DNA of 55,865 nucleotides, filler included, from Platydemus manokwari (Eukaryota), in NCBI GenBank assembly GCA_037951405.1. It is 5 parts of 5 records of this genome, joined end to end, with 100 filler letters (N's around TTAATTAATTAA, not from the genome) between each part and the next. Parts side by side here need not be neighbours in the genome. Positions count along the whole stretch, not along the records: positions 8,931 to 22,070 come from JBBMOY011824723.1; 4 more parts are not named here. One strand, written 5' to 3'. Both the position numbers and the translations under genes were made by a program. Under the pieces are notes generated by a model that was given only the letters and a program-made list of their open reading frames with translations, did no database searches and was not told where the DNA came from. Each line of letters opens with the position of its first letter. Position 1 is the stretch's first letter. Shown here piece by piece: positions 8,931-22,070 of this stretch.

Positions 8931-8946
8931 CAATTATAGAAAATTT

Positions 8947-8947
8947 G

Positions 8948-8980
<33 letters not shown>
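8947..8980. repeat. (AAT)n microsatellite
   Basis: Directly visible. Confidence 0.9.
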
Positions 8981-10024
8981 TAGCAATAAGGGATGTGAGA
9001 AATAAAAGCGTGACAGAAATGGTAAATAAGGAACTTGTTATACAGTTTATTAACAAATAAAAAGAGTAACCGGATACTAAAAACGAAATATTATTATAGA
9101 ATAAATAAATTTTTAAAACAATGTATTTTTTCAAGTTTTATTATTTGAGATATTTACAGATAATAATTATTATAAATACTGATATATTATTTTATAAATA
9201 TTACTTTAAACTGGTTTCACTCAAGTGTCCCAAGAATTCTCAAGACTTAAAAAATAAACACTAATTACATAAAAATCAATGTACATGTCATACGTATTGT
9301 CATGCATACAAATACAATTGTTATAAAAATTGTAACACAACGTTGCACAAGGTTTTGAGTCTGACTTAATCATTTTGTCGAGACTCCAAATTAACAATTA
9401 CTTGAATTCGGATGGAGCAAACTTTGGATGAAGATGAACTTCCTGTGATGCAAATAATGTAAGAAAAATTAATAAACGTAATTATAAATAACTTTTTCTT
9501 TTTATGTGACATAATCTTTTATTCTTGGTATTTTCTGATATTTCCAAAGTCAGATTGCTTGGTGATGTCGACCACCTTAGTATGAAAGCTAGTGCTAAGA
9601 ACTTATACAATACTTTGTTGAGGCGATTCTTAAAACAAAGCACTGTATTCTATCAAATCTACCGAATTCATAAGATAACAGAACCCCTGTGTTACCACCA
9701 AACACAACTTATTTTATAATAAGTTAATTTTCTGTTTAAATTTATTGTGAATTTTGACTGCTTCAAATTTTGATGTTGGTCAGATTATAGTAATATTAAA
9801 ATTGTGAAGAGTCGAAGATAAAAAAATAAAAAGAAATCTCTTTTTCTAATACAAATAGATTATTTTGTTTGGTTTTAAACTTGTACAAATGAAATTAAAC
9901 TTAAATGAATATTAACATTAAAGTAGCTTCTTATTGTTTATTAATATAAGAATGTTAATTAATAATGTTTACTAATATTAAAATGAATATTAATATGATA
10001 TATAAGTTTATTAATAATAAATAA

Positions 10025-13000
10025 TTATATATTTGATGTCAATCCATAAAAGAAATCAGATTCATCTAAAAGAAATTCACTGGGAGGAAACAATAGTACA
10101 ATTCGGCGTATTGAAGCATCTTCATATTCAATATGTCTAATAGATTTGTACAAACGATAAATACCAAACATAACTGTGTCGTTATGTCGAAGGGCCTTTA
10201 AATAAATTTCACCAAAAGTTTGACATCCACACAAATTTTTAAAACGATCTTCTTTCAATGCTAATAACTTTATATGTGACATTCTAATAATTCCAGAAAT
10301 TTTTTCAAAAGACTCATCCCGACTTCCCTCAATGAATAATCGAAGCAAATTAATAGTATTACAATCGAAATATGTTGAAGATAAAAGTGAATACAAAATA
10401 TTGTTACAATATGCATGACCTGATGCAAAAGCTTGAGTAAAATAAGCTCCATCAATTGGATTATCAAAATCCGTTGGATAGAGAAATCGAATATTATTTT
10501 CTATATTTATATCAGCTACAATTTTCGTTTTAATTAAATTATATTCACCAAATCTACCGTCTTTGTTGTTTACAACTCTCAAGTAATTTTCAATATTTAA
10601 AGTGCCAAGAATCACTTCTTTGTCGACTAAATACGGATCGCTAGAATTTTCATTAACAGAACTTGGTGCATTTATTAAAACACAGGTTGACGAGGTTTGT
10701 ACTTGAGCGATATTCAACACATCTTTATCAAAACATGAACCAATGACCACATATATCTCCGGAAATTGAGAAATACTTTTCCATTCTTTCTGTAAGTAAA
10801 TTTCATTTCCAATAATAACGATGGCTTCTATTTTTTTGTGAACATCGTTTTTTATTCTCAAAGGTTTGATAAAATTTATTAATCCAACTGCTTTAGAATG
10901 ATCTTTAGAAAATATACACAAAACAAAATGCCCAGTGAAAGTTTCATTGGTGGTAACAAGGCAATCTTGAAAGGAGCGGCTTGGAATTATATGGTATTGA
11001 TTATGTAAAGATTTGTCGAGAACTTTCTCCATTTCTCTATCATTAACATCCATACTTCTTCTCGGCACCACAAAATTAAAAGAAAGATTAAGTGGAAGAT
11101 ATTTAGAACACTTGCATTTTTTGAGCTTCTTCTCTTTCGGTTTATTTGAATGGCATTTTTCGCAAAATATCGATGCATTGAATACCATATCAGGATTGTT
11201 AGTTAAAAAATATGCTATGCAATTTTGATTGATTAAATTATGGGAGCTCGGATTCAGAACAATTATGCAGTCACCATCATCCGAAACTATCTCCAAACCA
11301 AAAATTATTAATGAAAAATTGATAAAACAATGATTTGCAACGTCTTTAAAAGATTTCAAATAATAGAACTGTGAAAGTGTTCCTCGAAAAATTGCCATCG
11401 AAAAACCCCTACTATACAGTTTGATCCAGGGTTTATTCAGACTGTCAATATTTTTATTGAGAGAATAAATTGTAAAAATATTACAAACGATCGTTGAAAA
11501 TCCTTTACAGAGACAACTTCTAGCTAAAATCCCAAGTTTCAATTCATTAAAACATATCACTTCATCACCGATTAATGGACACCAACTTGGTATGTTTAAT
11601 AAATGCATTTTATTGTGAAATCGTTGAAGTTGAACAACGACTCTTTGATCCGGTGTGAATGCTTTAACCGATATGACACGCATGATATTAGCTGCATCAA
11701 CTTCATCTTCATCTTCACAATATCGTTTTGTAACTACTAAGCATGCATCAGCAATATCAGCTCTTACTCTAATTAAATCATAAATTCTCATTGCTGTTCC
11801 CTATATAATCAAAATGAATAATTATCAATCAATATCAACGACCAAATTTTAAGTTACGAGTAACCCGATAAAGTCGATAAACTGAGGATTATTTATAGTC
11901 TTGGATGATTACTTATAATAATGTATAACAAGACTATTGTTAAAATCATGATTATAATCCTAATGTTAAAGTTAAAAAAGGGTCCTAAAACAAAATTTTA
12001 AATTTGTTGAGTGTGTTGCAAAAATACATATGATTTATTTAATTTTATTCTTTAAAAACGTTTAGAATCTTATATTGAAGTACTTAAGAAGAACTTAAGT
12101 CGTTTAAAATCATATATTAAATACACTAGACCTTCAAAATCTCCTAAAACTTGATTATTAAAATTAACGAGAACTCCTTTCTTAACATTAGAAGCAAATT
12201 GAAAGATACACTCAATTTTTACAATTATTTTATAAAAATAAGCAATCATATTATTACGCATGTCTGTAATGAATTAACTCGATTTAAAATTTAAATCTAA
12301 AAACTCAAATAATCATATAGAAGTTTTGTGATTAGAATAGGAACTTGGTTTTTAAAATATCTTTTGTCCCTATTAGACATTTTAAAAAATGAGATATTAA
12401 CTAAATTATATTAATAAATCAAACATCGAAATTATATATAAAATTAAGTTGTAAAATTAATAGAGTAGCGAAACTTCATTATTACTAAAGTAGGTCAAAG
12501 GATTCTTTTTCTTAATTTAAGCCGAAATAGGATATTTTTCAAATGTACAAATTTACTGTAAACAAACAACGGATAAAGAAAACAATATTCTATGAACAGT
12601 TATTACAATCGAAATAATAAATTAATTATGAAATCAAATTCAGTTTCATTGATGTAAAAAAATAAAAATATTAAAATGACAGAAAATTAAAGCGACTAAC
12701 AATCTAAATGCATGAAAACTCTAACAAATCTCATAGTTTATGTATCAAGGAAGAATAACGTATGTATATTCTTAGAATTCTTAATAGAGTTATATAATAT
12801 CAATTCAATCTTTTCAGCGTATATATCAAAATGAATATCTGTAGAATCTATAAAAGATACATGTATGATGGGAAAATTATTATTGTTTCATTGAAATGAA
12901 AAGGAAATTTATGATTTGAATGAACAACGATTATATAATTAGTATAAATGGGAAAAACAATAATTTTAAGAAAAATTATAGTAATAAAAATAAATAACAA

Positions 13001-14655
13001 TAAAATAAATTGAATAAATGTGGAAACTAAATAAACAAAAAAGCACCAGAGCAATACAATAATTATAACTAATAATTATGACTTTAAACCAGTGACCTTC
13101 ACACTTTTCATGTTGCGACCCAATTTACGAGTCCAAATTTTTCGTGACCCCCAGGTACTAAAATAAAAATAACAAAATAATTTTTTTCAATAAAAAAATA
13201 CTTTTTAAAAGGCCAATAAATTAAAATATATTTAATAATAATAACGATTTTGCACATTATGGGATTAACATCAAATATTGGCTCTATTTCGCTGATGACT
13301 AGTCTCAGTACTAATTGGAGATTTTTAAAATTCGATCGATATTTTGTCTGAGATTAGAATCGAGTTGAATCATGCTTTTTAATTTTAGTGATTTCATAAT
13401 CTTAACATTTTGAAATTCAAATTTATTATTTCATTACATGAATTCATTTGTCATTACATTGAATTGTCATTATTTTTATGAAAATTATTAAAAAATTAAT
13501 TTCAAAAAAGTAAATAACCTCGAAATATTGTGCCAAACTATATCGATTCAATAAAATTTTCAAATACAAACTCGGTTTCTTTCGACTTATGAAACCCACT
13601 GAAATATTTTTCGAATTACGATTATCATGATAGAAATCTTCAAGAAATTTTTCAATACTTTCATCATGCATACTTCCCGAAACGACTACGTGCTTTCTAT
13701 TGACAACAGGTTTATAAGATTTATTATAAATCGAGTGTGACATGAGAATATCAGAAATTTCTGGAATGAAACTGACAAATATACCCATAGAAATTAATAT
13801 GAAAATACAAATGAATATCCTCCCGCACTCGGTATTTGCAACAACATCTCCATACCCAATGGTAGCCATTGTGACAAGAGTAAAATAGAAACTTTTACCG
13901 TACGAAATATTTTGATGATTTTCATATTTCATCCAAATATCGCCGGTATTTTCAATTAAAAAAAATAAACCCGCACCACCAACCCAAATACTCAGAAAAA
14001 TACTGGCTAAATGCCAAAGCCGAATAATATTCCTGACATCCATCAAACCAATTCGTTGAATAGCATCTGGCACTTTATAAATCCAAAAGAATCTCAAGAA
14101 TAAAAATCCAGACCAAGTCCTTTGTAGTATTATTCCAGTGAAAACATTTGGAATGGTGAATATATCAATTATCGTATAAATATTTCTCCAATAATCCATT
14201 AAATTTCTCTGCGTTATGAATTCCAGACCAAAACAAACACAGAAATAAAACATCAACGCAATTTGAACGATTTCGAACACGTTTTCCGTCCACAAGCAAC
14301 AATTCTCCACAATTGGATTACTGTATCCATTTACGGCAAAAATAACAAATGAAATCATATTCATACAAATATTAAACAAATTCAATTTGGATTGAAATAA
14401 TTCATAGTCCACAAGAAATCTCGATAAAAATGAAAACGGTCCTTGAGAGTATCTGCTAAATTGATAAATATCCAAATTGCTGTGACTTTGAAATCTTCTG
14501 TTCACGGTTGCATAAATTTTCGATAGAAGATATTTATTGTATTTGATTTTAACCAATAAAATAAAATAAACAACACCATAAATTAGACAATCAATACCAA
14601 GAAATATGAACCATTTTTTATCTTCACATGATTTATAACAAAACCAACTTTTCAT
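10025..14655 (-). CDS. Slo/BK-family (KCNMA1/KCNU1-like) potassium channel alpha subunit, divergent; exons 14655-13519 and 11800-10025, ~970 aa
   Basis: S0-S6 helices, pore TMATIGYGDV, S6 FIPEISD, RCK1 RKHVVVSG, DAANIMRVIS, ELKLGILARSCL, linker CEKCH, RCK2 GHFVLC..NFIKPLR, TQAFASG, FGIYRL. GT..AG phase-0 intron 13518-11801 joins YFE|GTAMRIYDL, matching Slo1 FYQGSVLNPHDL. Confidence 0.93.
13090..13160 (+). mobile_element. Possible truncated hAT (Buster/Charlie-like) left end inside the Slo intron
   Basis: CAGTGACCTTCACACTTTT terminus, repeated g(c/t)gaccc subterminal motifs, preceded by CTTTAAAC with central TA. No right end seen. Confidence 0.35.
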
Positions 14656-15855
14656 TTCAATCGATGTAATATCGATTTTTATTATTGTCGATTTAATTTA
14701 AATGCAACAAACCAACTGAGACACTCATAGTCATATGGACTGGATATACGTGTAATGCATCATATGAGAATTACTTATAATTATGAATATTAGAAACAAC
14801 GCTTTGAGTTGATATGGGAACTGAAATAATTACAGACTTGTACATCAATAAATTATTAGCTCAAACCAGTATTTACATTGATACTAAAATCATATGAAAA
14901 TCAAAATACAAACGAATATAATTATTATTATATAAAGTAAACATGGAATTATTATCATAAAATCAAATTATTTATTATAAAAATTAAAATATATTGATAA
15001 AACTGGAGGGTCTGACGTTAAGTGTAGACAAATTTCACAAAAATCTAACGATCCTTTGCAAATAAGAATTCTTAATTTTACTAATTACATACACACGTGC
15101 TTACACTATTTTACATACAGAACCAACAACCAATGAAAACCAAGATACAATGGAAAGTTCATTCTAATTAAACACACATTCACACCAGCTGGTAAACTTA
15201 GAGATTATGAGATCATCATTCTCAAAAACCACTAATGCCAATCCAAATTCAAAAGTCAGAAATGCAAAATGAGAATAAAACCGAAAAAATAGGATCAATT
15301 GTGAATCTTTGGACAAAAGGGCTATACCTATTTTGAGAGTTTTGTGATGATTTCAGTTCAATAATTATGAACCCACAAAAAATACAGATATGTTAATTGA
15401 CTTTCACTTAATCATTAAAAACTTAAATTGTGAAAGACAATCAGATTAAGTAGAATTTGACAAAATATTAACAGAAATTATAAAACAGTAGCAAATTTTT
15501 CAGTGATTGTTTCAAAAAGACGGAAGAAATATTTATTTCAGGCCATTCGTTTCTGTGTGTAAAACGAATATCTTGGCTAACAGTTCGATCAAGTCAATAA
15601 TTATAACAAAAAAAATTCTTTCATTGTCAACAACATCTTACATACATTACCCATAAAACGTATAACTTAACAAAGAGTTAACATTAATAAATGTAAAAAT
15701 ATAAAAATACAATTAAAGACTGATAAATTAAAAGTACACAAAATATTATTAATAAAATGGTAATAAATCTTTAAAAATTGGTCCATCTCGATTGCAAATT
15801 AACATTTTGTTCTTTATTTAATTGAAATAAAGTCAATAAATCTCATAAATGCTAA

Positions 15856-16374
15856 TTAATCATTTAATTTTGCTAAATGAACAAGTATTATACTATCACC
15901 ACGTAAAAATAATTGGTCGGAAAATATAGTTTTGACTTCTTCAAGTGATGCTAAATTATTGTTTATCGAAAACGTTGAATCACTCATTACTTTTTTCATG
16001 TTCTAATTGAAAACTCAATAATCATAAAATTCCATACAAAATTATTTACCAAATGTTTATTTATAATTTTATACTCTCTTGTATTTTGAATTACCTAATA
16101 ATATGAAAATTAAAACCAAGTTATTAAAAATGTAGACTACCAAATTCCAATGTTTATCGAATGCTATTAAGTTGCCCAGCACAATGCTTCGTAATGAATT
16201 TAAATTCCGGGTTAAAATAACAATTTCTGATTTATTTTCCATCCATTTTTGCATTAATGAAAATGGACCATGTTTACATTTTTCTACATTATGGTAAATT
16301 TTTAAGTTTCAGTTATTAAAATAATTACCTTTCCAAAATTCAATTAGACCATTTAATTTTTTACTATTATTCAT
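15856..16374 (-). CDS. LSM11: U7 snRNP Sm-like protein Lsm11; exons 16374-16329, 16283-16141, 16094-16050, 16002-15856 (~126 aa; a further 5' exon is possible)
   Basis: GPFSLMQKWMENKSEIVILTRNLNSLRSIVLGNLIAFDKHWNLVI (Sm1 with the Lsm11-type AFDKHWN), long spacer, then DQLFLRGDSIILVHLA (Sm2). Three GT-AG introns of 45-47 nt keep the frame. Confidence 0.8.
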
Positions 16375-18015
16375 TTTTTTATCATAACCAAAACTGTGTT
16401 TAAAAGTGTGCTTTATTTAAATCATATATTTAAACAAATATTTTTAAGTATAAATTTAAAAAATTAAGAAATATGAAATCGTCATTAAATTAGTTATGAT
16501 TATATTTTATCAAATCTAAAAAACATTTTGTATGCTAAAATTCTTATTCATCTCAGAATGACCATATAATTTTAGAATATATATGGAATTTATGATTGTA
16601 AATCACAGTTTATGATTCAAAATAACTAAATCACAAACAATTACTGGTATAGGCAATTTAATGATGCACAAGGAAAATTAATCAGAACGACTAGAATTTC
16701 AATAGCAACGAATCTGTCTGAAGTTTGAAACATGCAGTCTGCATATCTAAACATTTTAAAATAATCTTTTAGTTTACGTACATATAAGTATAACACAAAA
16801 TTAGCTATGTTTTCAGAATACACATAGATCTTTTTATTGAACATTATTTTTTCCATTTTTTATGTTTACTCCATTCTCTCCAAGATCAGTCACCTGTTTT
16901 CGGAAGCACTTGATAAGTGTTCTACTTTATTAAATAATTTTTTTTTCATAGAATTTGGGTTTATAATTATTTTATTATTATTATAGTTTATTTATATGTT
17001 ACAGTTTTTTTTATTATAATGTAAATTTTTAAAGGGTTTTCAATTTGCGTGATTTTGATACATATTATAAACTGGTTTTACCATATTATTTTGCATTTAA
17101 CGTGCATAGTATTTTCCTTATATTAACAACAGAAGTTTCAGAATTTACATTTAAATATTCAATATTATTTCGTAAGAAGTGCAACTATTATCAGAACATT
17201 GTCTTTTCAAATTGATAATAGTCCCAAACATCAACAATTAAATATTGTTGAGTAAGACAAAATTATTTGGTTATTCAGAATTTAGACCCAACAATATGGC
17301 TGTGTATTACCAGTGCAATAATTATCTTAAGAATGAGGGTACTCAGTTAATAATGACTGGTGGAAATATGTCAATGTTTACTAAAATATGAAACAATTAA
17401 TAAGTGAACTCACACGAACTTGTCTTTTCAAAAAAAATTAGCTGGGCATTACCTTAACTCAAAACTAAAGACAAATAATATCGTTGGTTTTTTACGTTCC
17501 TGCGTTTGTTTAAAACTCAAAGACTCAACAGTCTGAGTACTTTTCTACGGTTTATAATCAGTCTCCGATTTTAAAGATGAAACCATAAGCTATTAAACAA
17601 GTCAATTGACAAACCTTTATTTATTCAATAATATGCAGATTAGACGATTTCATAATTCAATAAAACACTGAGTATGATCACAGTTAGTCATTGCCATGAG
17701 ATTGTTCTATCATGTTATTTTTTGCGTCAATTTCAAATCAGCATCAGATAACAGACCATGCATTCTGTATTCTAACATTTTCGGTGATTGATTAGTATGT
17801 TTTGTCCAAACTTTATTGTCCATTTCTATGACCAAAGCAATCTTTTGGTTTATAAGGGATTAATCAATATTAATAAGAGTTTTTAATCATATAAAGCATT
17901 AACTGCTGAATAAATATTTGATTTAAACTTCTTATGTCAAATTTGTTAAATTTGTTTCAAAATTTTTGTTGCGTTTCCTATTATATATATATACCTTGAA
18001 TAGTTTTTATAATAG

Positions 18016-18871
18016 TGTTAGGATCCGAACCCACAGTGAGTCACAGAACGACACAATAACATGATACGCCCACAAACATAATCACATAATTAAAAATCCA
18101 AAAAATAAATAAAAATCCTATAAATAGAAAGAAATTAAAAATAGAATTTAATAATTATAAAAATGGAATAGAAACTAAAAATATAATTTATTAATTACAA
18201 AAATAGAACAGAAAACAAAAATAGGATTTTAAAATTCCAGAAATAGAAAAATCGTGATTGGTTAAAATTATAACGAAAATAGTATATAAGTAGCTAGAGA
18301 TTTAGAACAAATCACCAAAAAAGTTAACTGTGAATAACCACTTATCAGTCTAAAAGCACAGTCACCTACCATAAACACTACGATTGTATATCAGCCAAAG
18401 AAATTAGTCACAGAAAGAAGTATTAGTCAGCTACATGACAAGCATAGAAATCTCCTCCACAAGCCAATTGATTTAGTCGGCGAGGAACAGACCGAATTAT
18501 TGATCGTTATTTTCATACCGTGGCGATTCATTCGGTATTAAGTAAAACTTTCTTCGTTTTGTTCCTACCTTTTTTAATAGCTTTTATTCATTGTACGGTT
18601 CATCCGTATCGTGAATCTTACTCTCTGGTTAAATGAGCCACACTTCGCCAGTTCTGTGTTTCCATAATTATATCAAATTAATTTTGTTCATTTTATATTG
18701 TTGTTATATGATTGATAATTATATTTTACAGCATATTCGCGTTATTGTTATTTATTATACTATTATTTATAATTAAATTGCAACCTACATACTTCACACG
18801 AAACAGAACCGATTGTCTGGAGTCCGATCGGTACAACAGCGAGCATCTCAACAACCAATCTCATCACAACA
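18016..18871 (+). mobile_element. Solo long LTR-like element
   Basis: Imperfect inverted termini TGTTAGGAT...ATCACAACA; ATTGG box and TATATAAG at ~18257-18290; A-rich then T-rich halves. TSD not matched. Confidence 0.5.
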
Positions 18872-19533
18872 AATTAAATTTAAAATAATTCAATTTAAAT
18901 TTTAAACCTCACAATTTAAATGTTGTTTTTATCAATATTTGTGGTCAGTTGTGCGGCTCAGAAACTCAGTTTTCCTAAAATTCATTTGTATGACACACTA
19001 TATTTTCGTTGCTTGGATCCCATTTTTACGATAAATGCTCGATTACCTGACTATCCTTTATCGAAATTGTGGTTTTCATTAAAACTTCTCCAATCGATAT
19101 AAGAAGTGACTGGACTATATTTTGAAGCAAGGCTAACTCTGCCCTTTCATTGACTTCAACAATACGAAAAAAGTAACTGTGATGACCAAGTTTTGCAATT
19201 TACAAAATAGATAAAACTAACAGACAATTCAATCCCTAACACGATTATCTTTCAATGGAGTATGTTGACAGTCTTTTCCAAATTATTTGGAGAACATTCT
19301 AATTTCACGCTCTCTGATTTTTAAAAACAACGTGTAATGTAAATATTAATTTGGATGTGTTAATAGCCATCTCTCTATCAGTAAATTGATATTGATACTG
19401 CCTGAAATGCAATATTGCCGCAATTGTAAATTACTAAAAAGTACAATTTAAATGTAGTTGGAAGCTAAGAGAACCTTTGTAGAATACAAGAACGACAACT
19501 TCCTTTACTATAGGCTAATAGCTATATGAATGC

Positions 19534-19737
19534 TGTTAGCTGCAACTATTTTAAAAAACACACATTAAATCAAATAAAAAGTCAAGACACAATCAATATA
19601 TCTTAAATCCAAACATTTAAACAAATATTTCTAATTTTACATTAATTTAATTTTTTATAAAATTAAAATTAAATCTGAATTAAATTTGAATAAAATTTGA
19701 ATTAAAATTAAATTTAATTCATTTAAAATATCTCAAA
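19534..19737 (-). mobile_element. Solo short LTR of the short-LTR Gypsy family
   Basis: Aligns with the LTRs at 37387-37530 and 37759-37913; perfect 5-bp TSD AATGC (19529-33, 19738-42). Confidence 0.8.
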
Positions 19738-20605
19738 AATGCTTTTATTATGAAATGTGTTAGCGTCAATGAATTTTTGTTAATTTGGACTTGCCATTTT
19801 CATACCTTTGATTTTGCGTGTGTTTATCATCACTTTTTCTAATAGTAATTAATTTATTAATTATTATTAATTATTTATTTACTGTTTTAATATTCTAGTG
19901 CATATTCTTATTATTTAATTAATAGTTTCGCAATTTCCTAAATTATAGCCAACACAAAATAAAGAGATATATTTGATTCTTGATATAAAACATTTAAATC
20001 ACTGATTAATAACTATTTGAGATTATGTAAATATGTACAGAAATATTCTTATTTATAAATAGTTATGCAGTGTTGGAATTACATTTATTAAATTACCGAT
20101 TTGATCGAGTTTGAAGAAAATGTCCTCTAACGATCAGAATAAAAAAGAAATATCATTGTTTATAATTTATTTATAATAAGGCTTTTAGTTAGGACAAAGA
20201 TTGGAAGAATCATTTGCACAAATTCTAAACAACTCCATTTAGATAACAATAAATTTGATCAAAATCTGTTTTCACTTTCTCTATTGTATTTCAATATGAA
20301 GGTTATTCATCAAATTTTCAATAATTTTAGAAAAAAAAGATGTTTCTACAAATATAATATAAAATAAAATTATATTTCTGCATTAAATATCTTTTCGATT
20401 GTTTTATTTATTCATTATTTTTTGTTATGCAGATTAATTATAATCATTTCGTAACAAACAATAAAATTATTGATTATATAATCAGAAATAATTAGTGAAA
20501 CATTTAAACATGGTATTACAAGATTCTATTGATCCCAAACGTTTACGATTTTATTCCAACAAATTATATATGATTTTAAAGTTTTTATAAAAGTTTTTTT
20601 ATATA

Positions 20606-21262
20606 AAGCATTGGAACGAAAGTCTTGTCCGATAGAAAATAATATTTTTTTAACCAATAAAGGCAATATGTAAATTGAGAGATACAAACAAAACATCAAT
20701 CGTCTGTGAATCTAAAAAAATCCAGTGTTTTATAAAGAAATGTTTAAATACATTATTAAACCCTTTTTTAAATGTTTAAATTCTATCTTATAATTAAATA
20801 ATTTTTTCAGATAGCTATCATTTAAAAAATATTATTTATCGTCGGTGCGATTCAAGAAAAGAGCCAATGGTTGCATGGAAACAGTTTTGAAAAGCTCCAT
20901 TTCCTTTACCATAACGATCGACACGTTTAACTCAAATTAAGCTTGCTGAGATCGGTTTTATGGCAATACCGCATCCGCCATACTCTCCATACCTTGCCCT
21001 TCATACTATCTCCTGTTTTCTCCTCTGAAAAACTCATTTCGTGCAAAAATGGTTCGCATCAAGACCTGCAGAATTCTATGAAAACGGCATAAAACAACTT
21101 CAGAAAGGCTGGAAAAAGTGTGTGGACCTTAATTGTGATTATTTTCAACATTTTAGATTTACAGATGAATGATGTTTTCTTTATACTTCTCAATTTACAT
21201 ATTTTCTTTATTGGTTAAATAAATATAATTTTCTATCGGACGAAACTTTCGTTCCAATCCCA
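20606..21262 (+). mobile_element. Internally deleted mariner DNA transposon
   Basis: TIRs attggaacgaaagtcttgtccgatagaaaat / attttctatcggacgaaactttcgttccaat with TA flanks; transposase C-terminus PHPPYSPYLA(P)SYYLLFSPLKN...WFASRPAEFYENGIKQLQKGWKKCVDLNCDYF. Confidence 0.88.
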
Positions 21263-22070
21263 TATTAATTAAAAGAAATGATTATCTTTAAGAAATTTAT
21301 TTGAATATTTTTGTTAAACTCATGTTCAATGAAATATTAGCAGCTAATAGCTTATATAAATCTTCACCGTTTAAACCATGGCTTTTTTCTTCATTAGAGA
21401 TCAACCTAGTCAAAATTAAAACTTCAAGTATTCTTTGTATTTACTTTTTAAAATTAAAAAACCTATAAATTTCAAATAGACCGCTACTCAATGTTTATAT
21501 CATTCAGAGCACTGAGAAACATTTCCTCAACTCTTATATATAATTTGAGATATTCTTAAATAATCGTATACAGTTTGATTATTGTAATATATAAATATTT
21601 TTCATTGATATTTTTATTTCAGTCTTAAAACTATAGCAATAATTTTTTAATTAGATTATCAAATTATCGACATGAATGAAATTCATAAATAGTTATTTAT
21701 TTTTTATATTGTGCTACGTTAATGAAGTTTTAAAAATTCAATTTTCAGTTTACGAGGAAAAATTTTATAAAATTATAAACCATTGTTAAACATGGATTTT
21801 TGAAATTTTCGATGGACGACATATATTTAATCTGTAAATTTATATATGAAAAAGAAAAAAAATTGTATTCAGATAACAACTAACCAGAGTATTTTCATGC
21901 TTAATTATTAAAACTGCTAAGAAAAAATGATTTTTAACTTCTAAAATTGTTGTAATGAAAAAATTGGTTTTAGATTTTGACTGGGTTTCAAATACATTCA
22001 ACAAATATTTGAAATTCTTATTTAAAATGTAATAAGTTTATGTGAGGCTAAATATTATAAAATACTGCAT

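What the first reader, a model, noticed from the sequence alone, without database searches (positions are those of the whole stretch)
10025..14655. Intact BK/Slo-family channel that has lost most canonical activation sensors but keeps the heme motif
Seen, by eye against mammalian Slo1 from memory. S2 QIDMAF..GLRF is IVQIAL..GLEF (D153>Q, R167>E). S4 GLRFLRALRL is GFLFLRFFWI (R207>L, R213>W). The Ca bowl QFLDQDDDDDPD is RFLYPTDFDNPID. RCK1 Ca site: D367>N, R514>Y, E535>A. Mg site: N172>R, E374>S, E399>Q. The GYG filter, the S6 acidic ring (PEISD), S0, both RCK domains and the CKACH heme motif (CEKCH) are retained in a ~970-aa reading frame with no internal stops. Established: D153, R167, D186 and R213 carry BK gating charge, and only D186 remains here. 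Inference: a largely voltage- and Ca-independent K+ channel gated by another ligand (heme/redox/gas, pH) or a modulatory subunit, paralleling the divergence of Slo3.
Basis: partly seen in the sequence, partly recalled or inferred. Interest (0 to 1): 0.8.

Follow-up and report, generated by a model that had tools for sequence, protein, structure and literature searches.

The report
Divergent sensor-poor Slo potassium channel gene
This is an intact two-exon gene for a very divergent BK/Slo-type potassium channel that keeps the pore and overall architecture but has replaced most residues that let ordinary BK channels sense voltage, calcium and magnesium; a second species shares most of these replacements, so it looks like a working but re-tuned channel, not a decaying copy.

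Summary
On the minus strand, exon 1 (14655-13519, 379 aa) and exon 2 (11800-10025, 591 aa plus stop) flank a 1,718-nt phase-0 GT..AG intron and give a 970-aa Slo-family protein. So it is a spliced gene, not one uninterrupted frame.

The reading needs four corrections:
- R210 is kept, and a new Lys sits at position 216.
- The Ca bowl keeps both side-chain ligands (mD898 and mD900).
- R514 binds Ca2+ through its backbone, so R514Y says little.
- CxxCH occurs in about 92% of Slo1-like sequences, Slo3 included, so keeping it says nothing about heme.

Two UniParc-only gene models (P0187 and P0001, about 50% identical) are its orthologue, split at the same intron site. They share Q153, an acid at 167, a base at 172, W213, K216, N367 and the loss of E535.

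Tree tests exclude the canonical Slo1 and vertebrate Slo1/Slo3 clades. The exact position is unresolved: near the base, or with the flatworm 'type-2' Slo genes.

I class it as a new variant of a known kind, of moderate interest.

The parts
13519..14655 (-). Coding exon 1 (379 aa): start Met, S0, voltage-sensor domain S1-S4, pore S5-P-S6, C-linker and the first strands of RCK1.
   Evidence: ORF and translation. HMMER to BK structures E 2e-59. AlphaFold2 model pLDDT 91.5 with helices S0-S6; best Foldseek matches are Slo1 structures at E 1e-22. The orthologue model P0187 has the same length, start and end.
11801..13518 (-). Intron, 1,718 nt, phase 0, GT..AG, AT-rich (22-26% GC), with stops in all frames and highly repeated sequence.
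   Evidence: Splice-site context. Composition. Three-frame translation. Summed contig depth rises from about 14 over the exons to as much as 2e5 at 11792-12555 and 12938-13510.
10025..11800 (-). Coding exon 2 (591 aa plus stop at 10025-10027): rest of RCK1, a short RCK1-RCK2 linker, and RCK2 to the normal Slo C-terminal end.
   Evidence: ORF. Pfam Slo-like_RCK, BK_channel_a and Slowpoke_C. HMMER to BK gating-ring structures E 2e-89. Orthologue P0001 is 51-53% identical.
14536..14613 (-). S0 transmembrane helix (WFIFLGIDCLIYGVVYFILLV...), the extra N-terminal helix typical of Slo1/Slo3.
   Evidence: Aligns with S0 of other Slo proteins. Helix 15-55 in the model. Translation checked.
14050..14103 (-). 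S4 segment LFLRFFWIYKVPD: R207L, R210 kept, R213W, Q216K, E219D.
   Evidence: Gap-free HMMER alignment to Aplysia Slo1, where R196/R199/R202 equal mouse R207/R210/R213 (PMC5677106). The orthologue reads FFLRFIWVYKIPD. Translation checked.
13846..13863 (-). K+ selectivity filter TIGYGD.
   Evidence: T265, G267 and D270 are invariant in 49 Slo sequences. Translation checked.
13621..13623 (-). Codon for Asn at the position of mD367, the RCK1 Ca2+ ligand. It lies in the conserved replacement motif NRNSKNI, where canonical Slo1 has DRDDVNVE.
   Evidence: The role of D367 is from PMC5677106.
11150..11164 (-). CEKCH, the CxxCH motif equivalent to human 612-CKACH-616.
   Evidence: The motif is described in PMC12346439.
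10454..10489 (-). Degenerate Ca bowl RFLYPTDFDNPI. The Asp equivalent to mD898 and mD900 are kept and the other acidic residues are lost.
   Evidence: HMMER alignment to Aplysia Slo1 899-910. Ligand roles from PMC5677106. The orthologue reads FLYPNSLDSSQN.

Best explanation
The stretch is a functional, single-copy, two-exon gene for a pore-forming subunit of the Slo (BK-like) K+ channel family. It belongs to a fast-evolving lineage that also exists in at least one other, unnamed species.

Shown:
- It has the full Slo1 architecture: S0, S1-S6, a TIGYGD filter, the PEISDI acidic ring, a C-linker of normal length and two RCK domains.
- The side-chain ligands of the RCK1 Ca2+ site (D367N, E535A) are gone.
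- The Mg2+ bridge between the voltage sensor and RCK1 is gone (N172R, E374S, E399Q).
- The voltage sensor is remodelled (D153Q, R167E, R207L, R213W, Q216K).
- Most of these states are shared by the orthologue.

Inferred:
- The protein forms a K+-selective tetramer whose opening depends little on voltage and not on Ca2+ binding at RCK1 or on Mg2+.
- Any remaining Ca2+ sensitivity would have to come from the reduced Ca bowl.
- The conserved gating ring still controls the pore, either through another cytosolic signal (protons, another ion or a small molecule; not identifiable from sequence) or as a fixed bias.
- The sequence gives no special support for heme.
For: Intactness and constraint:
- 970 codons without a stop at about 31% GC, P about 2e-36.
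- Exon GC is 30-31% against 22-26% in the intron.
- Exons are at single-copy depth with no variant letters.
- The orthologue halves P0187 and P0001 have the same start, the same intron site and 49-53% identity.
- Identity to the orthologue is highest in structured parts (pore 61%, RCK1 N-lobe 64%, RCK2 55%, S0 54%) and lowest in loops (22-37%).

Family and architecture:
- Pfam and PDB HMMER.
- AlphaFold2 pLDDT 91.5, with Foldseek Slo1 hits at E 1e-22 against Slo2.2 at 1e-7.

Sensor states:
-, read against PMC5677106, PMC2151507 and PMC9231616.
- Q153, an acid at 167, W213, K216, N367 and a non-acid at 535 occur in both orthologues. They are rare or absent among the 57 other Slo1-like sequences.
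Against: - No transcript evidence: the only public run holding the locus is not on record as RNA.
- The two Ca-bowl Asp that matter most functionally are present, so Ca2+ activation through RCK2 cannot be excluded in this species.
- R210 and K216 leave two positive charges in S4, so some voltage dependence is possible.
- Single-mutant data point in opposite directions. R207 neutralisation favours the activated sensor and R213 neutralisation the resting one (PMC2151507; PMC12218146). The net state of this sensor therefore cannot be predicted.
- Whether a canonical Slo1 exists in the same genome is unknown.
Confidence: 0.7

Rival explanations
1. It is a silent or modulatory subunit. It does not form useful homotetramers, but co-assembles with the organism's canonical Slo1 (or a type-2 Slo) and changes the Ca2+ and voltage set-point of the heteromer.
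For: The pore, S0, C-linker and RCK assembly domains are the best conserved parts, while the sensors are dismantled. That pattern fits a subunit that only has to assemble. From general knowledge, mixed Slo-family channels have been reported; I did not check this in a paper here.
Against: Nothing in the sequence requires a partner. The filter and inner-pore acidic ring are intact. Whether a canonical Slo1 exists in this genome could not be tested.
Confidence: 0.15
2. It is not an extra paralogue. It is the lineage's own Slo1 orthologue, evolving very fast in a fast-evolving AT-rich genome, and it sits outside canonical Slo1 only through long-branch artefact.
For: - The stem branch is very long (1.41 substitutions per site).
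- Amino-acid composition deviates from the alignment's.
- The preference for a basal position shrinks under the site-heterogeneous model.
Against: - Sister position to the canonical bilaterian Slo1 group is rejected under both models (AU 0.024 with LG+F+G4; 0.005 with LG+C20+F+G4).
- Placement on single canonical members costs 36-53 lnL units.
- Named flatworms already carry a canonical and a type-2 Slo.
Confidence: 0.1
3. It is a recently inactivated or unexpressed gene copy, possibly retrocopy-derived, that merely has not yet acquired a stop codon.
For: - It has only one intron, although by general knowledge animal Slo genes usually have many.
- No RNA evidence.
- Many canonical functional residues are lost.
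Against: - About 50% protein divergence from the orthologue without a single stop or frameshift in either species.
- Start codon and intron position are conserved.
- Conservation follows domains.
- The derived sensor residues are shared.
- The AlphaFold2 model is high-confidence.
Confidence: 0.05

Closest known systems
Slo1 / BK (KCNMA1, Drosophila slowpoke, Aplysia Slo1)
   Same: - Same 7-TM architecture with S0, GYG pore, inner-pore acidic ring, C-linker length, two RCK domains and CxxCH.
- Best sequence and fold matches.
- R210, D186 and the two key Ca-bowl Asp are retained.
   Different: - D153, R167, R207 and R213 are replaced.
- The RCK1 Ca2+ ligands D367 and E535 are lost.
- The Mg2+ site residues N172, E374 and E399 are lost, and N449 is lost.
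- Only about 30-36% identity.
- A position inside or beside canonical Slo1 is rejected.
- Two exons only.
Slo3 (KCNU1), the pH-gated sperm channel of vertebrates
   Same: It is a Slo1-derived channel that lost Ca2+ sensing (no Ca bowl, altered RCK1 site) while keeping S0, the pore and CxxCH. As an analogy for re-tuning the gating ring it is apt.
   Different: Slo3 keeps the S4 arginines and D153/R167 (rows P0023 and P0070). It arose within the vertebrate Slo1 clade, and grouping the window gene with that clade is rejected (AU 7e-7 and 0.026).
Flatworm 'type-2' Slo paralogues (Spirometra KAL7055420.1, Dicrocoelium CAH8647106.1, Rodentolepis, Sparganum)
   Same: - Divergent Slo1-like paralogues that exist beside a canonical Slo1 in flatworms.
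- A sister position is statistically as good as the best tree (delta lnL 1.3, AU 0.60 under C20).
- Their Ca bowl is also partly degenerate (FLDP-DFEKSDV).
   Different: They keep R207, R210, R213, D153, R167, D367 and E535. They share only about 35% identity with the window protein.
Demosponge Slo (cluster containing Halichondria panicea XP_064402925.1)
   Same: - Best maximum-likelihood neighbour.
- Shares Trp at the R213 position (8 of 10 representatives) and Gln at E399.
- The genes are intron-free where examined.
   Different: - The sponge proteins keep D367, E535, a full acidic Ca bowl, N449, R167 and an acid at 153.
- Support for the grouping is weak (79/80).
- It is compatible with long-branch attraction. 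Exclusive shared residues show no excess once normalised.
Slo2 (KCNT1/2, Na+/Cl- activated)
   Same: A Slo-family channel with a charge-poor S4 and no Ca2+ activation, so it is a functional analogy.
   Different: A much weaker match (E 1e-15 against 1e-89 for the gating ring; Foldseek 1e-7 against 1e-22). The Slo2-like sequences form the outgroup in all trees.

Membership tests
Slo superfamily (Slo1/Slo2/Slo3-type RCK-gated K+ channels) | 6-TM K+ channel core with a GYG filter, followed by tandem RCK domains on one polypeptide. | tested here: met
   Pfam Ion_trans, Ion_trans_2, Slo-like_RCK (two stretches), BK_channel_a and Slowpoke_C. TIGYGD. PDB matches.
Slo1/BK (KCNMA1-type) | An additional S0 helix before S1. 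| tested here: met
   A hydrophobic segment aligns with S0. Helix 15-55 lies ahead of S1 in the pLDDT 91.5 model, and Foldseek aligns 367-373 of 379 residues to Slo1 chains.
Slo1/BK (KCNMA1-type) | Voltage-sensing charges: R210 and R213 in S4, with D153, R167 and D186. | tested here: not met
   R213W, D153Q and R167E; only R210 and D186 remain. The orthologue shares W213, Q153 and D167 and also has N186.
Slo1/BK (KCNMA1-type) | RCK1 high-affinity Ca2+ site (side chains of D367 and E535). | tested here: not met
   D367N and E535A here; N and S in the orthologue. Roles from PMC5677106.
Slo1/BK (KCNMA1-type) | Ca bowl in RCK2 (side chains of mD898 and mD900, plus N449 from the neighbouring subunit). 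| tested here: inconclusive
   Both Asp are present in TDFDNP, but the flanking acidic residues are gone and N449 is Ala. The orthologue has Ser at the 898 position.
Slo1/BK (KCNMA1-type) | Mg2+ site between the voltage sensor and RCK1 (D99, N172, E374, E399). | tested here: not met
   N172R, E374S and E399Q. D99 lies in the poorly alignable S0-S1 loop and was not assigned.
Slo1/BK (KCNMA1-type) | Phylogenetic position within the canonical bilaterian Slo1 clade. | tested here: not met
   AU 0.024 (LG+F+G4) and 0.005 (LG+C20+F+G4) for a position sister to the canonical group. Positions inside the group are worse.
Slo1/BK (KCNMA1-type) | Activation by micromolar Ca2+ and depolarisation, with large conductance. 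| not testable with these tools
   Needs electrophysiology.
Slo3 (KCNU1) | Membership of the vertebrate Slo1/Slo3 clade; gating by pH. | tested here: not met
   The clade placement is rejected (AU 7e-7; 0.026). pH gating cannot be tested here.
Slo2 (KCNT) | Closest similarity to the Slo2 gating ring and transmembrane domain; no S0. | tested here: not met
   PDB KCNT1 E 1e-15 to 1e-16 against BK 1e-89. Foldseek 1e-7 against 1e-22. S0 is present.

The most novel reading that the evidence does not exclude
The window gene and its orthologue may represent an undescribed Slo subfamily, probably of flatworms or another helminth group. In it the Slo1 scaffold has been stripped of its voltage, RCK1-Ca2+ and Mg2+ sensors, and a new conserved set of residues is fixed in their place: Q153, an acid at 167, a base at 172, W213, K216 and the NRNSKNI motif where the D367-E374 loop normally sits. 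That would be a K+ channel gated through its gating ring by a so far unknown cytosolic signal, arisen independently of Slo3 and Slo2.
Probability: 0.3. Interest if true: 0.65.

Novelty: new variant of a known kind. Interest (0 to 1): 0.45.

Why it matters
BK channels are a textbook case of a pore controlled allosterically by three sensors: voltage, Ca2+ and Mg2+. This protein changes nearly all the classic sensor residues at once, yet its pore, S0, C-linker and gating ring stay under constraint in two species. It is in effect a multi-site mutant made by evolution.

Expressing it would show what a Slo1 scaffold does without those sensors, and whether the conserved replacement residues form a new sensor or lock the domains in one state.

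If the host is a parasitic flatworm or nematode, this matters for pharmacology too, because Slo channels are anthelmintic targets (emodepside). The survey also showed that sensor loss is common among invertebrate Slo paralogues (tardigrade, annelid and flatworm paralogues, and sponge Slo). That tempers how surprising this one gene is.

Tried and rejected
- **Naming the organism.** This failed.
  - The single run holding the locus is coded and is not RNA.
  - Rfam and tRNA scans of the piece were empty.
  - ESM Atlas look-ups gave only generic Slo or DPYD clusters.
  - The orthologue models are UniParc-only (UPI00060A26A0, UPI00060C3042).
  - A search with the non-Slo tail of P0001 showed that the tail is a repeat ORF fused into many gene models of the same unnamed proteome.
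  - A Spirometra fragment has a nearby UniParc id. That only hints at a helminth annotation batch.
- **treekit AU test.** The test on the 59-row C20 tree did not finish in three 300-s calls. Constrained IQ-TREE searches also timed out. I replaced them with a prune-and-regraft placement scan on a 34-row set.
- **Kinship with sponge Slo.** I counted residues shared exclusively with each clade. Sponges scored 26, against 2-11 for the other groups. After normalising for each clade's number of diagnostic columns there was no excess, so I do not claim that relationship.
- **Sensor salt-bridge swap.** I considered that the acid at 167 and the Lys at 216 pair with each other.
- **Gating-ring fold.** I did not fold it, because HMMER at E 1e-89 to solved gating rings already settles the fold.
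- **Heme-specific reading.** Rejected as unsupported.
Full report
**Gene model**

The piece (8931-22070) is very AT-rich, at 21-32% GC. On the minus strand it holds two very long ORFs, 13444-14655 and 10025-11791. The next longest stop-to-stop frame in the piece is 81 aa.

- The first ORF leaves the Slo alignment after ...AQYFE, at a GAG|GTTATT donor.
- The second ORF re-enters it three codons upstream of its first ATG, after a TATATAG| acceptor.
- Splicing 13519 to 11800 (phase 0, 1,718-nt intron) restores YFEGTAMRIYDLIRV, which aligns residue for residue with the vertebrate FYQGSVLNPHDLARV.
- The product is 970 aa (379 + 591) with no stop.
- At the exons' base composition the chance of that is about 2e-36.

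In the one public run that holds the locus, the exons sit at single-copy depth (about 14) with no differing letters. Two parts of the intron reach summed depths of 1e4 to 2e5, so they are highly repeated sequence.

**Family**

- Pfam gives Ion_trans, Ion_trans_2, Slo-like_RCK (two stretches), BK_channel_a and Slowpoke_C.
- Against solved structures the best matches are Aplysia, Drosophila and human BK, at E 2e-59 (exon 1) and 2e-89 (exon 2). Slo3 scores 8e-67 and Slo2 only about 1e-15.
- An AlphaFold2 model of the exon-1 product has mean pLDDT 91.5 and pTM 0.81. It shows S0, S1-S4, S5, the pore helix, S6 and the first strand-helix units of RCK1.
- Foldseek's best matches are Slo1 structures at about E 1e-22, against 1e-7 for Slo2.2.

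**Residue check**

I counted positions in the gap-free HMMER alignments to Aplysia Slo1. I used the Aplysia-to-mouse equivalences and ligand roles given in PMC5677106.

| Sensor | State in the window protein |
|---|---|
| Voltage sensor | D153Q, R167E, R207L, R213W |
| Mg2+ site | N172R, E374S, E399Q |
| RCK1 Ca2+ site | D367N, R514Y, E535A |
| Ca bowl | RFLYPTDFDNPI |

TIGYGD, PEISDI and CEKCH are retained.

Five points change the picture:

1. **R210 is kept.** PMC9231616 names R210 and R213 as the S4 gating charges.
2. **A new charge in S4.** Q216, the next position in the every-third-residue series, is Lys in both this protein and its orthologue.
3. **The Ca bowl is only partly lost.** The two side chains that coordinate Ca2+ there are mD898 and mD900. 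Both are present in T-D-F-D-N-P. The other two ligands are backbone carbonyls. The Asn from the neighbouring subunit (N449) is Ala.
4. **R514Y is weak evidence.** R514 acts through its backbone carbonyl.
5. **CxxCH is the family default.** It is present in 49 of the 52 main-clade sequences that have a residue there (57 in the set) and 8 of 10 sponge Slo sequences, including Slo3. Keeping it says nothing specific about heme (motif: PMC12346439).

**Relatives**

The word-index search and an exhaustive HMMER search of 1.84 billion representatives both find one close relative of exon 2. This is P0001, at 629 bits and 51-53% identity. The next hit drops to 304 bits and 36%.

Exon 1 finds P0187, at 49% identity. 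P0187 is exactly 379 aa, starts at the equivalent Met, and ends at ...YVE followed by three read-through codons (VTF) that begin with the intron's GT. P0001 begins inside the intron and ends in a repeat-derived ORF that is fused to many gene models of the same proteome.

P0187 and P0001 are therefore most simply the two halves of the orthologue in another species, split at the same intron. Both are known only by UniParc ids.

The orthologue shares these derived states:
- Q at 153, an acid at 167, a base at 172.
- A hydrophobic residue at 207, with R210 kept.
- W at 213, K at 216, D at 219.
- N at 367 within a conserved NRNSKNI motif.
- A non-acid at 535, and I at 513.

It differs at these positions: N at 186, R at 374, E at 399, and Ser at the first Ca-bowl Asp.

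Identity between the two proteins follows structure:

| Region | Identity to orthologue |
|---|---|
| RCK1 N-lobe | 64% |
| Pore | 61% |
| RCK2 | 55% |
| S0 | 54% |
| Voltage sensor | 46% |
| Loops | 22-37% |

Together with the intact frames, this is the pattern of a protein under purifying selection. Because the RCK1-site losses are shared and the Ca-bowl states are not, I consider the RCK1 Ca2+ site truly abandoned. The Ca bowl is probably not under selection for Ca2+ binding, although it may still bind in this species.

**Phylogeny**

- A 59-row tree (LG+C20 PMSF) puts the pair on a stem of 1.41 substitutions per site. It lies outside a 40-row clade holding cnidarian and bilaterian Slo1-like genes and Slo3 (97% SH-aLRT).
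- Cluster look-ups name key rows:
  - Canonical Slo1: Polistes.
  - Cnidarian: Pocillopora.
  - Flatworm 'type-2' Slo: Spirometra and Dicrocoelium.
  - Nemertean paralogue: Tubulanus.
  - Tardigrade paralogues.
  - The clade I had called P0025-like, which is demosponge Slo (its cluster contains Halichondria panicea XP_064402925.1).
- I regrafted the pair onto every branch of a 34-row backbone and applied the AU test.

| Placement of the pair | LG+F+G4 | LG+C20+F+G4 |
|---|---|---|
| Sister to sponge Slo | best (AU 0.76) | best (AU 0.68) |
| Sister to flatworm type-2 Slo | AU 0.62 | delta lnL 1.3, AU 0.60 |
| Sister to all cnidarian + bilaterian Slo1-like genes | AU 0.36 | delta lnL 1.4, AU 0.33 |
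| Sister to all of those plus sponge Slo | AU 0.19 | delta lnL 1.5, AU 0.27 |
| Sister to canonical bilaterian Slo1 | rejected (0.024) | rejected (0.005) |
| Sister to vertebrate Slo1/Slo3 | rejected (7e-7) | rejected (0.026) |
| Sister to cnidarian Slo | rejected (0.027) | rejected (0.031) |

The preference for a basal position weakens under the better model, and the branch is long. I therefore read the basal placement as possibly artefactual. The exact position is open: either a deep lineage or a fast-evolving relative of the flatworm type-2 paralogues. It is not Slo3-like by descent.

The Trp at 213 is shared with sponge Slo (8 of 10). A count of exclusively shared residues shows no excess once normalised, so I do not claim kinship on that basis.

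**Mechanism**

Shown: the pore and its acidic ring, S0, the C-linker length and both RCK domains are conserved. The Mg2+ bridge and the RCK1 Ca2+ ligands are gone. The voltage sensor retains two basic S4 residues (R210, K216), and position 167 has reversed from base to acid.

Inferred: the protein forms a K+-selective tetramer with weak or no voltage dependence and no Mg2+ or RCK1-Ca2+ activation.

The direction of the sensor's bias cannot be predicted:
- Neutralising R207 or R210 stabilises the activated sensor by 3-7 kcal/mol (PMC2151507).
- The Aplysia equivalents R196Q and R199Q lock the sensor active, and the human R207A structure shows an activated sensor without Ca2+ (PMC12218146; entry 8v63).
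- R202Q, the R213 equivalent, locks the sensor at rest and closes the pore (PMC12218146).
- This protein combines both kinds of change.

The conserved replacement motifs at the interface between the voltage sensor and RCK1 (a base at 172, and NRNSKNI) suggest a re-made interface, not a ruined one. What it responds to cannot be read from sequence.

**Limits**

The organism is not identified. No RNA data exist in the tools. No orthologue DNA was available for dN/dS. Whether a canonical Slo1 co-exists in the genome is unknown. The motif table also shows that partial sensor loss is common in invertebrate Slo paralogues. This gene is an extreme case of a known tendency, not a new kind of channel.

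**Verdict**

It is a new variant of a known kind, of moderate interest (0.45).

Noticed in passing
window 15856-16308 (-): Two short ORFs on the same strand as the channel gene match complementary halves of the Pfam LSM domain: profile positions 20-35 (E 0.067) and 38-65 (E 0.02). They read ...LIAFDKHWNLV and ...LFLRGDSIILV. This is probably an Sm/LSm-type gene (SmD2-like, from memory) split by a short intron, just upstream of the Slo gene.
   Followed up: partly
window 21041-21172 (+): Remnant of the C-terminal end of a mariner transposase. It matches Mos1 and SETMAR at E 1e-4 (QKWFASRPAEFYENGIKQLQKGWKKCVDLNCDYF). The upstream frame is broken by stops.
   Followed up: partly
window 11792-12555 and 12938-13510 (inside the intron): In the one run that holds the locus, summed contig depth rises from about 14 over the exons to 1e4-2e5. 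There are hundreds of short contigs and loose ends. This points to very abundant short interspersed repeats that account for most of the intron's length. Their family was not identified. Rfam and tRNA scans were empty.
   Followed up: partly
P0025, P0026, P0064, P0074, P0078, P0080, P0083, P0086, P0089 (loci L001-L006): Demosponge Slo genes (the cluster contains Halichondria panicea XP_064402925.1) naturally carry Trp or Cys at the position of the gating charge R213 (S4 reads LRFIWLTQ). They have Gln at E399 and His at E374, so no Mg2+ site. They keep both Ca2+ sites. In the six loci fetched, each is one uninterrupted ORF of 880-1050 codons.
   Followed up: partly
P0062, P0067, P0073, P0085, P0106 and other rows: Several invertebrate Slo paralogues have independently lost R213, D367, E535 or the Ca bowl. 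P0067 and P0085 are named as tardigrade (Paramacrobiotus). Sensor loss in Slo paralogues therefore looks widespread.
   Followed up: no
P0001 residues 590-874: The C-terminal third of the orthologue's gene model is not Slo. It is a repeat-derived ORF that is also fused to at least 21 otherwise unrelated gene models of the same UniParc-only proteome. That annotation is heavily chimeric, and the true C-terminus of the orthologue is missing.
   Followed up: yes
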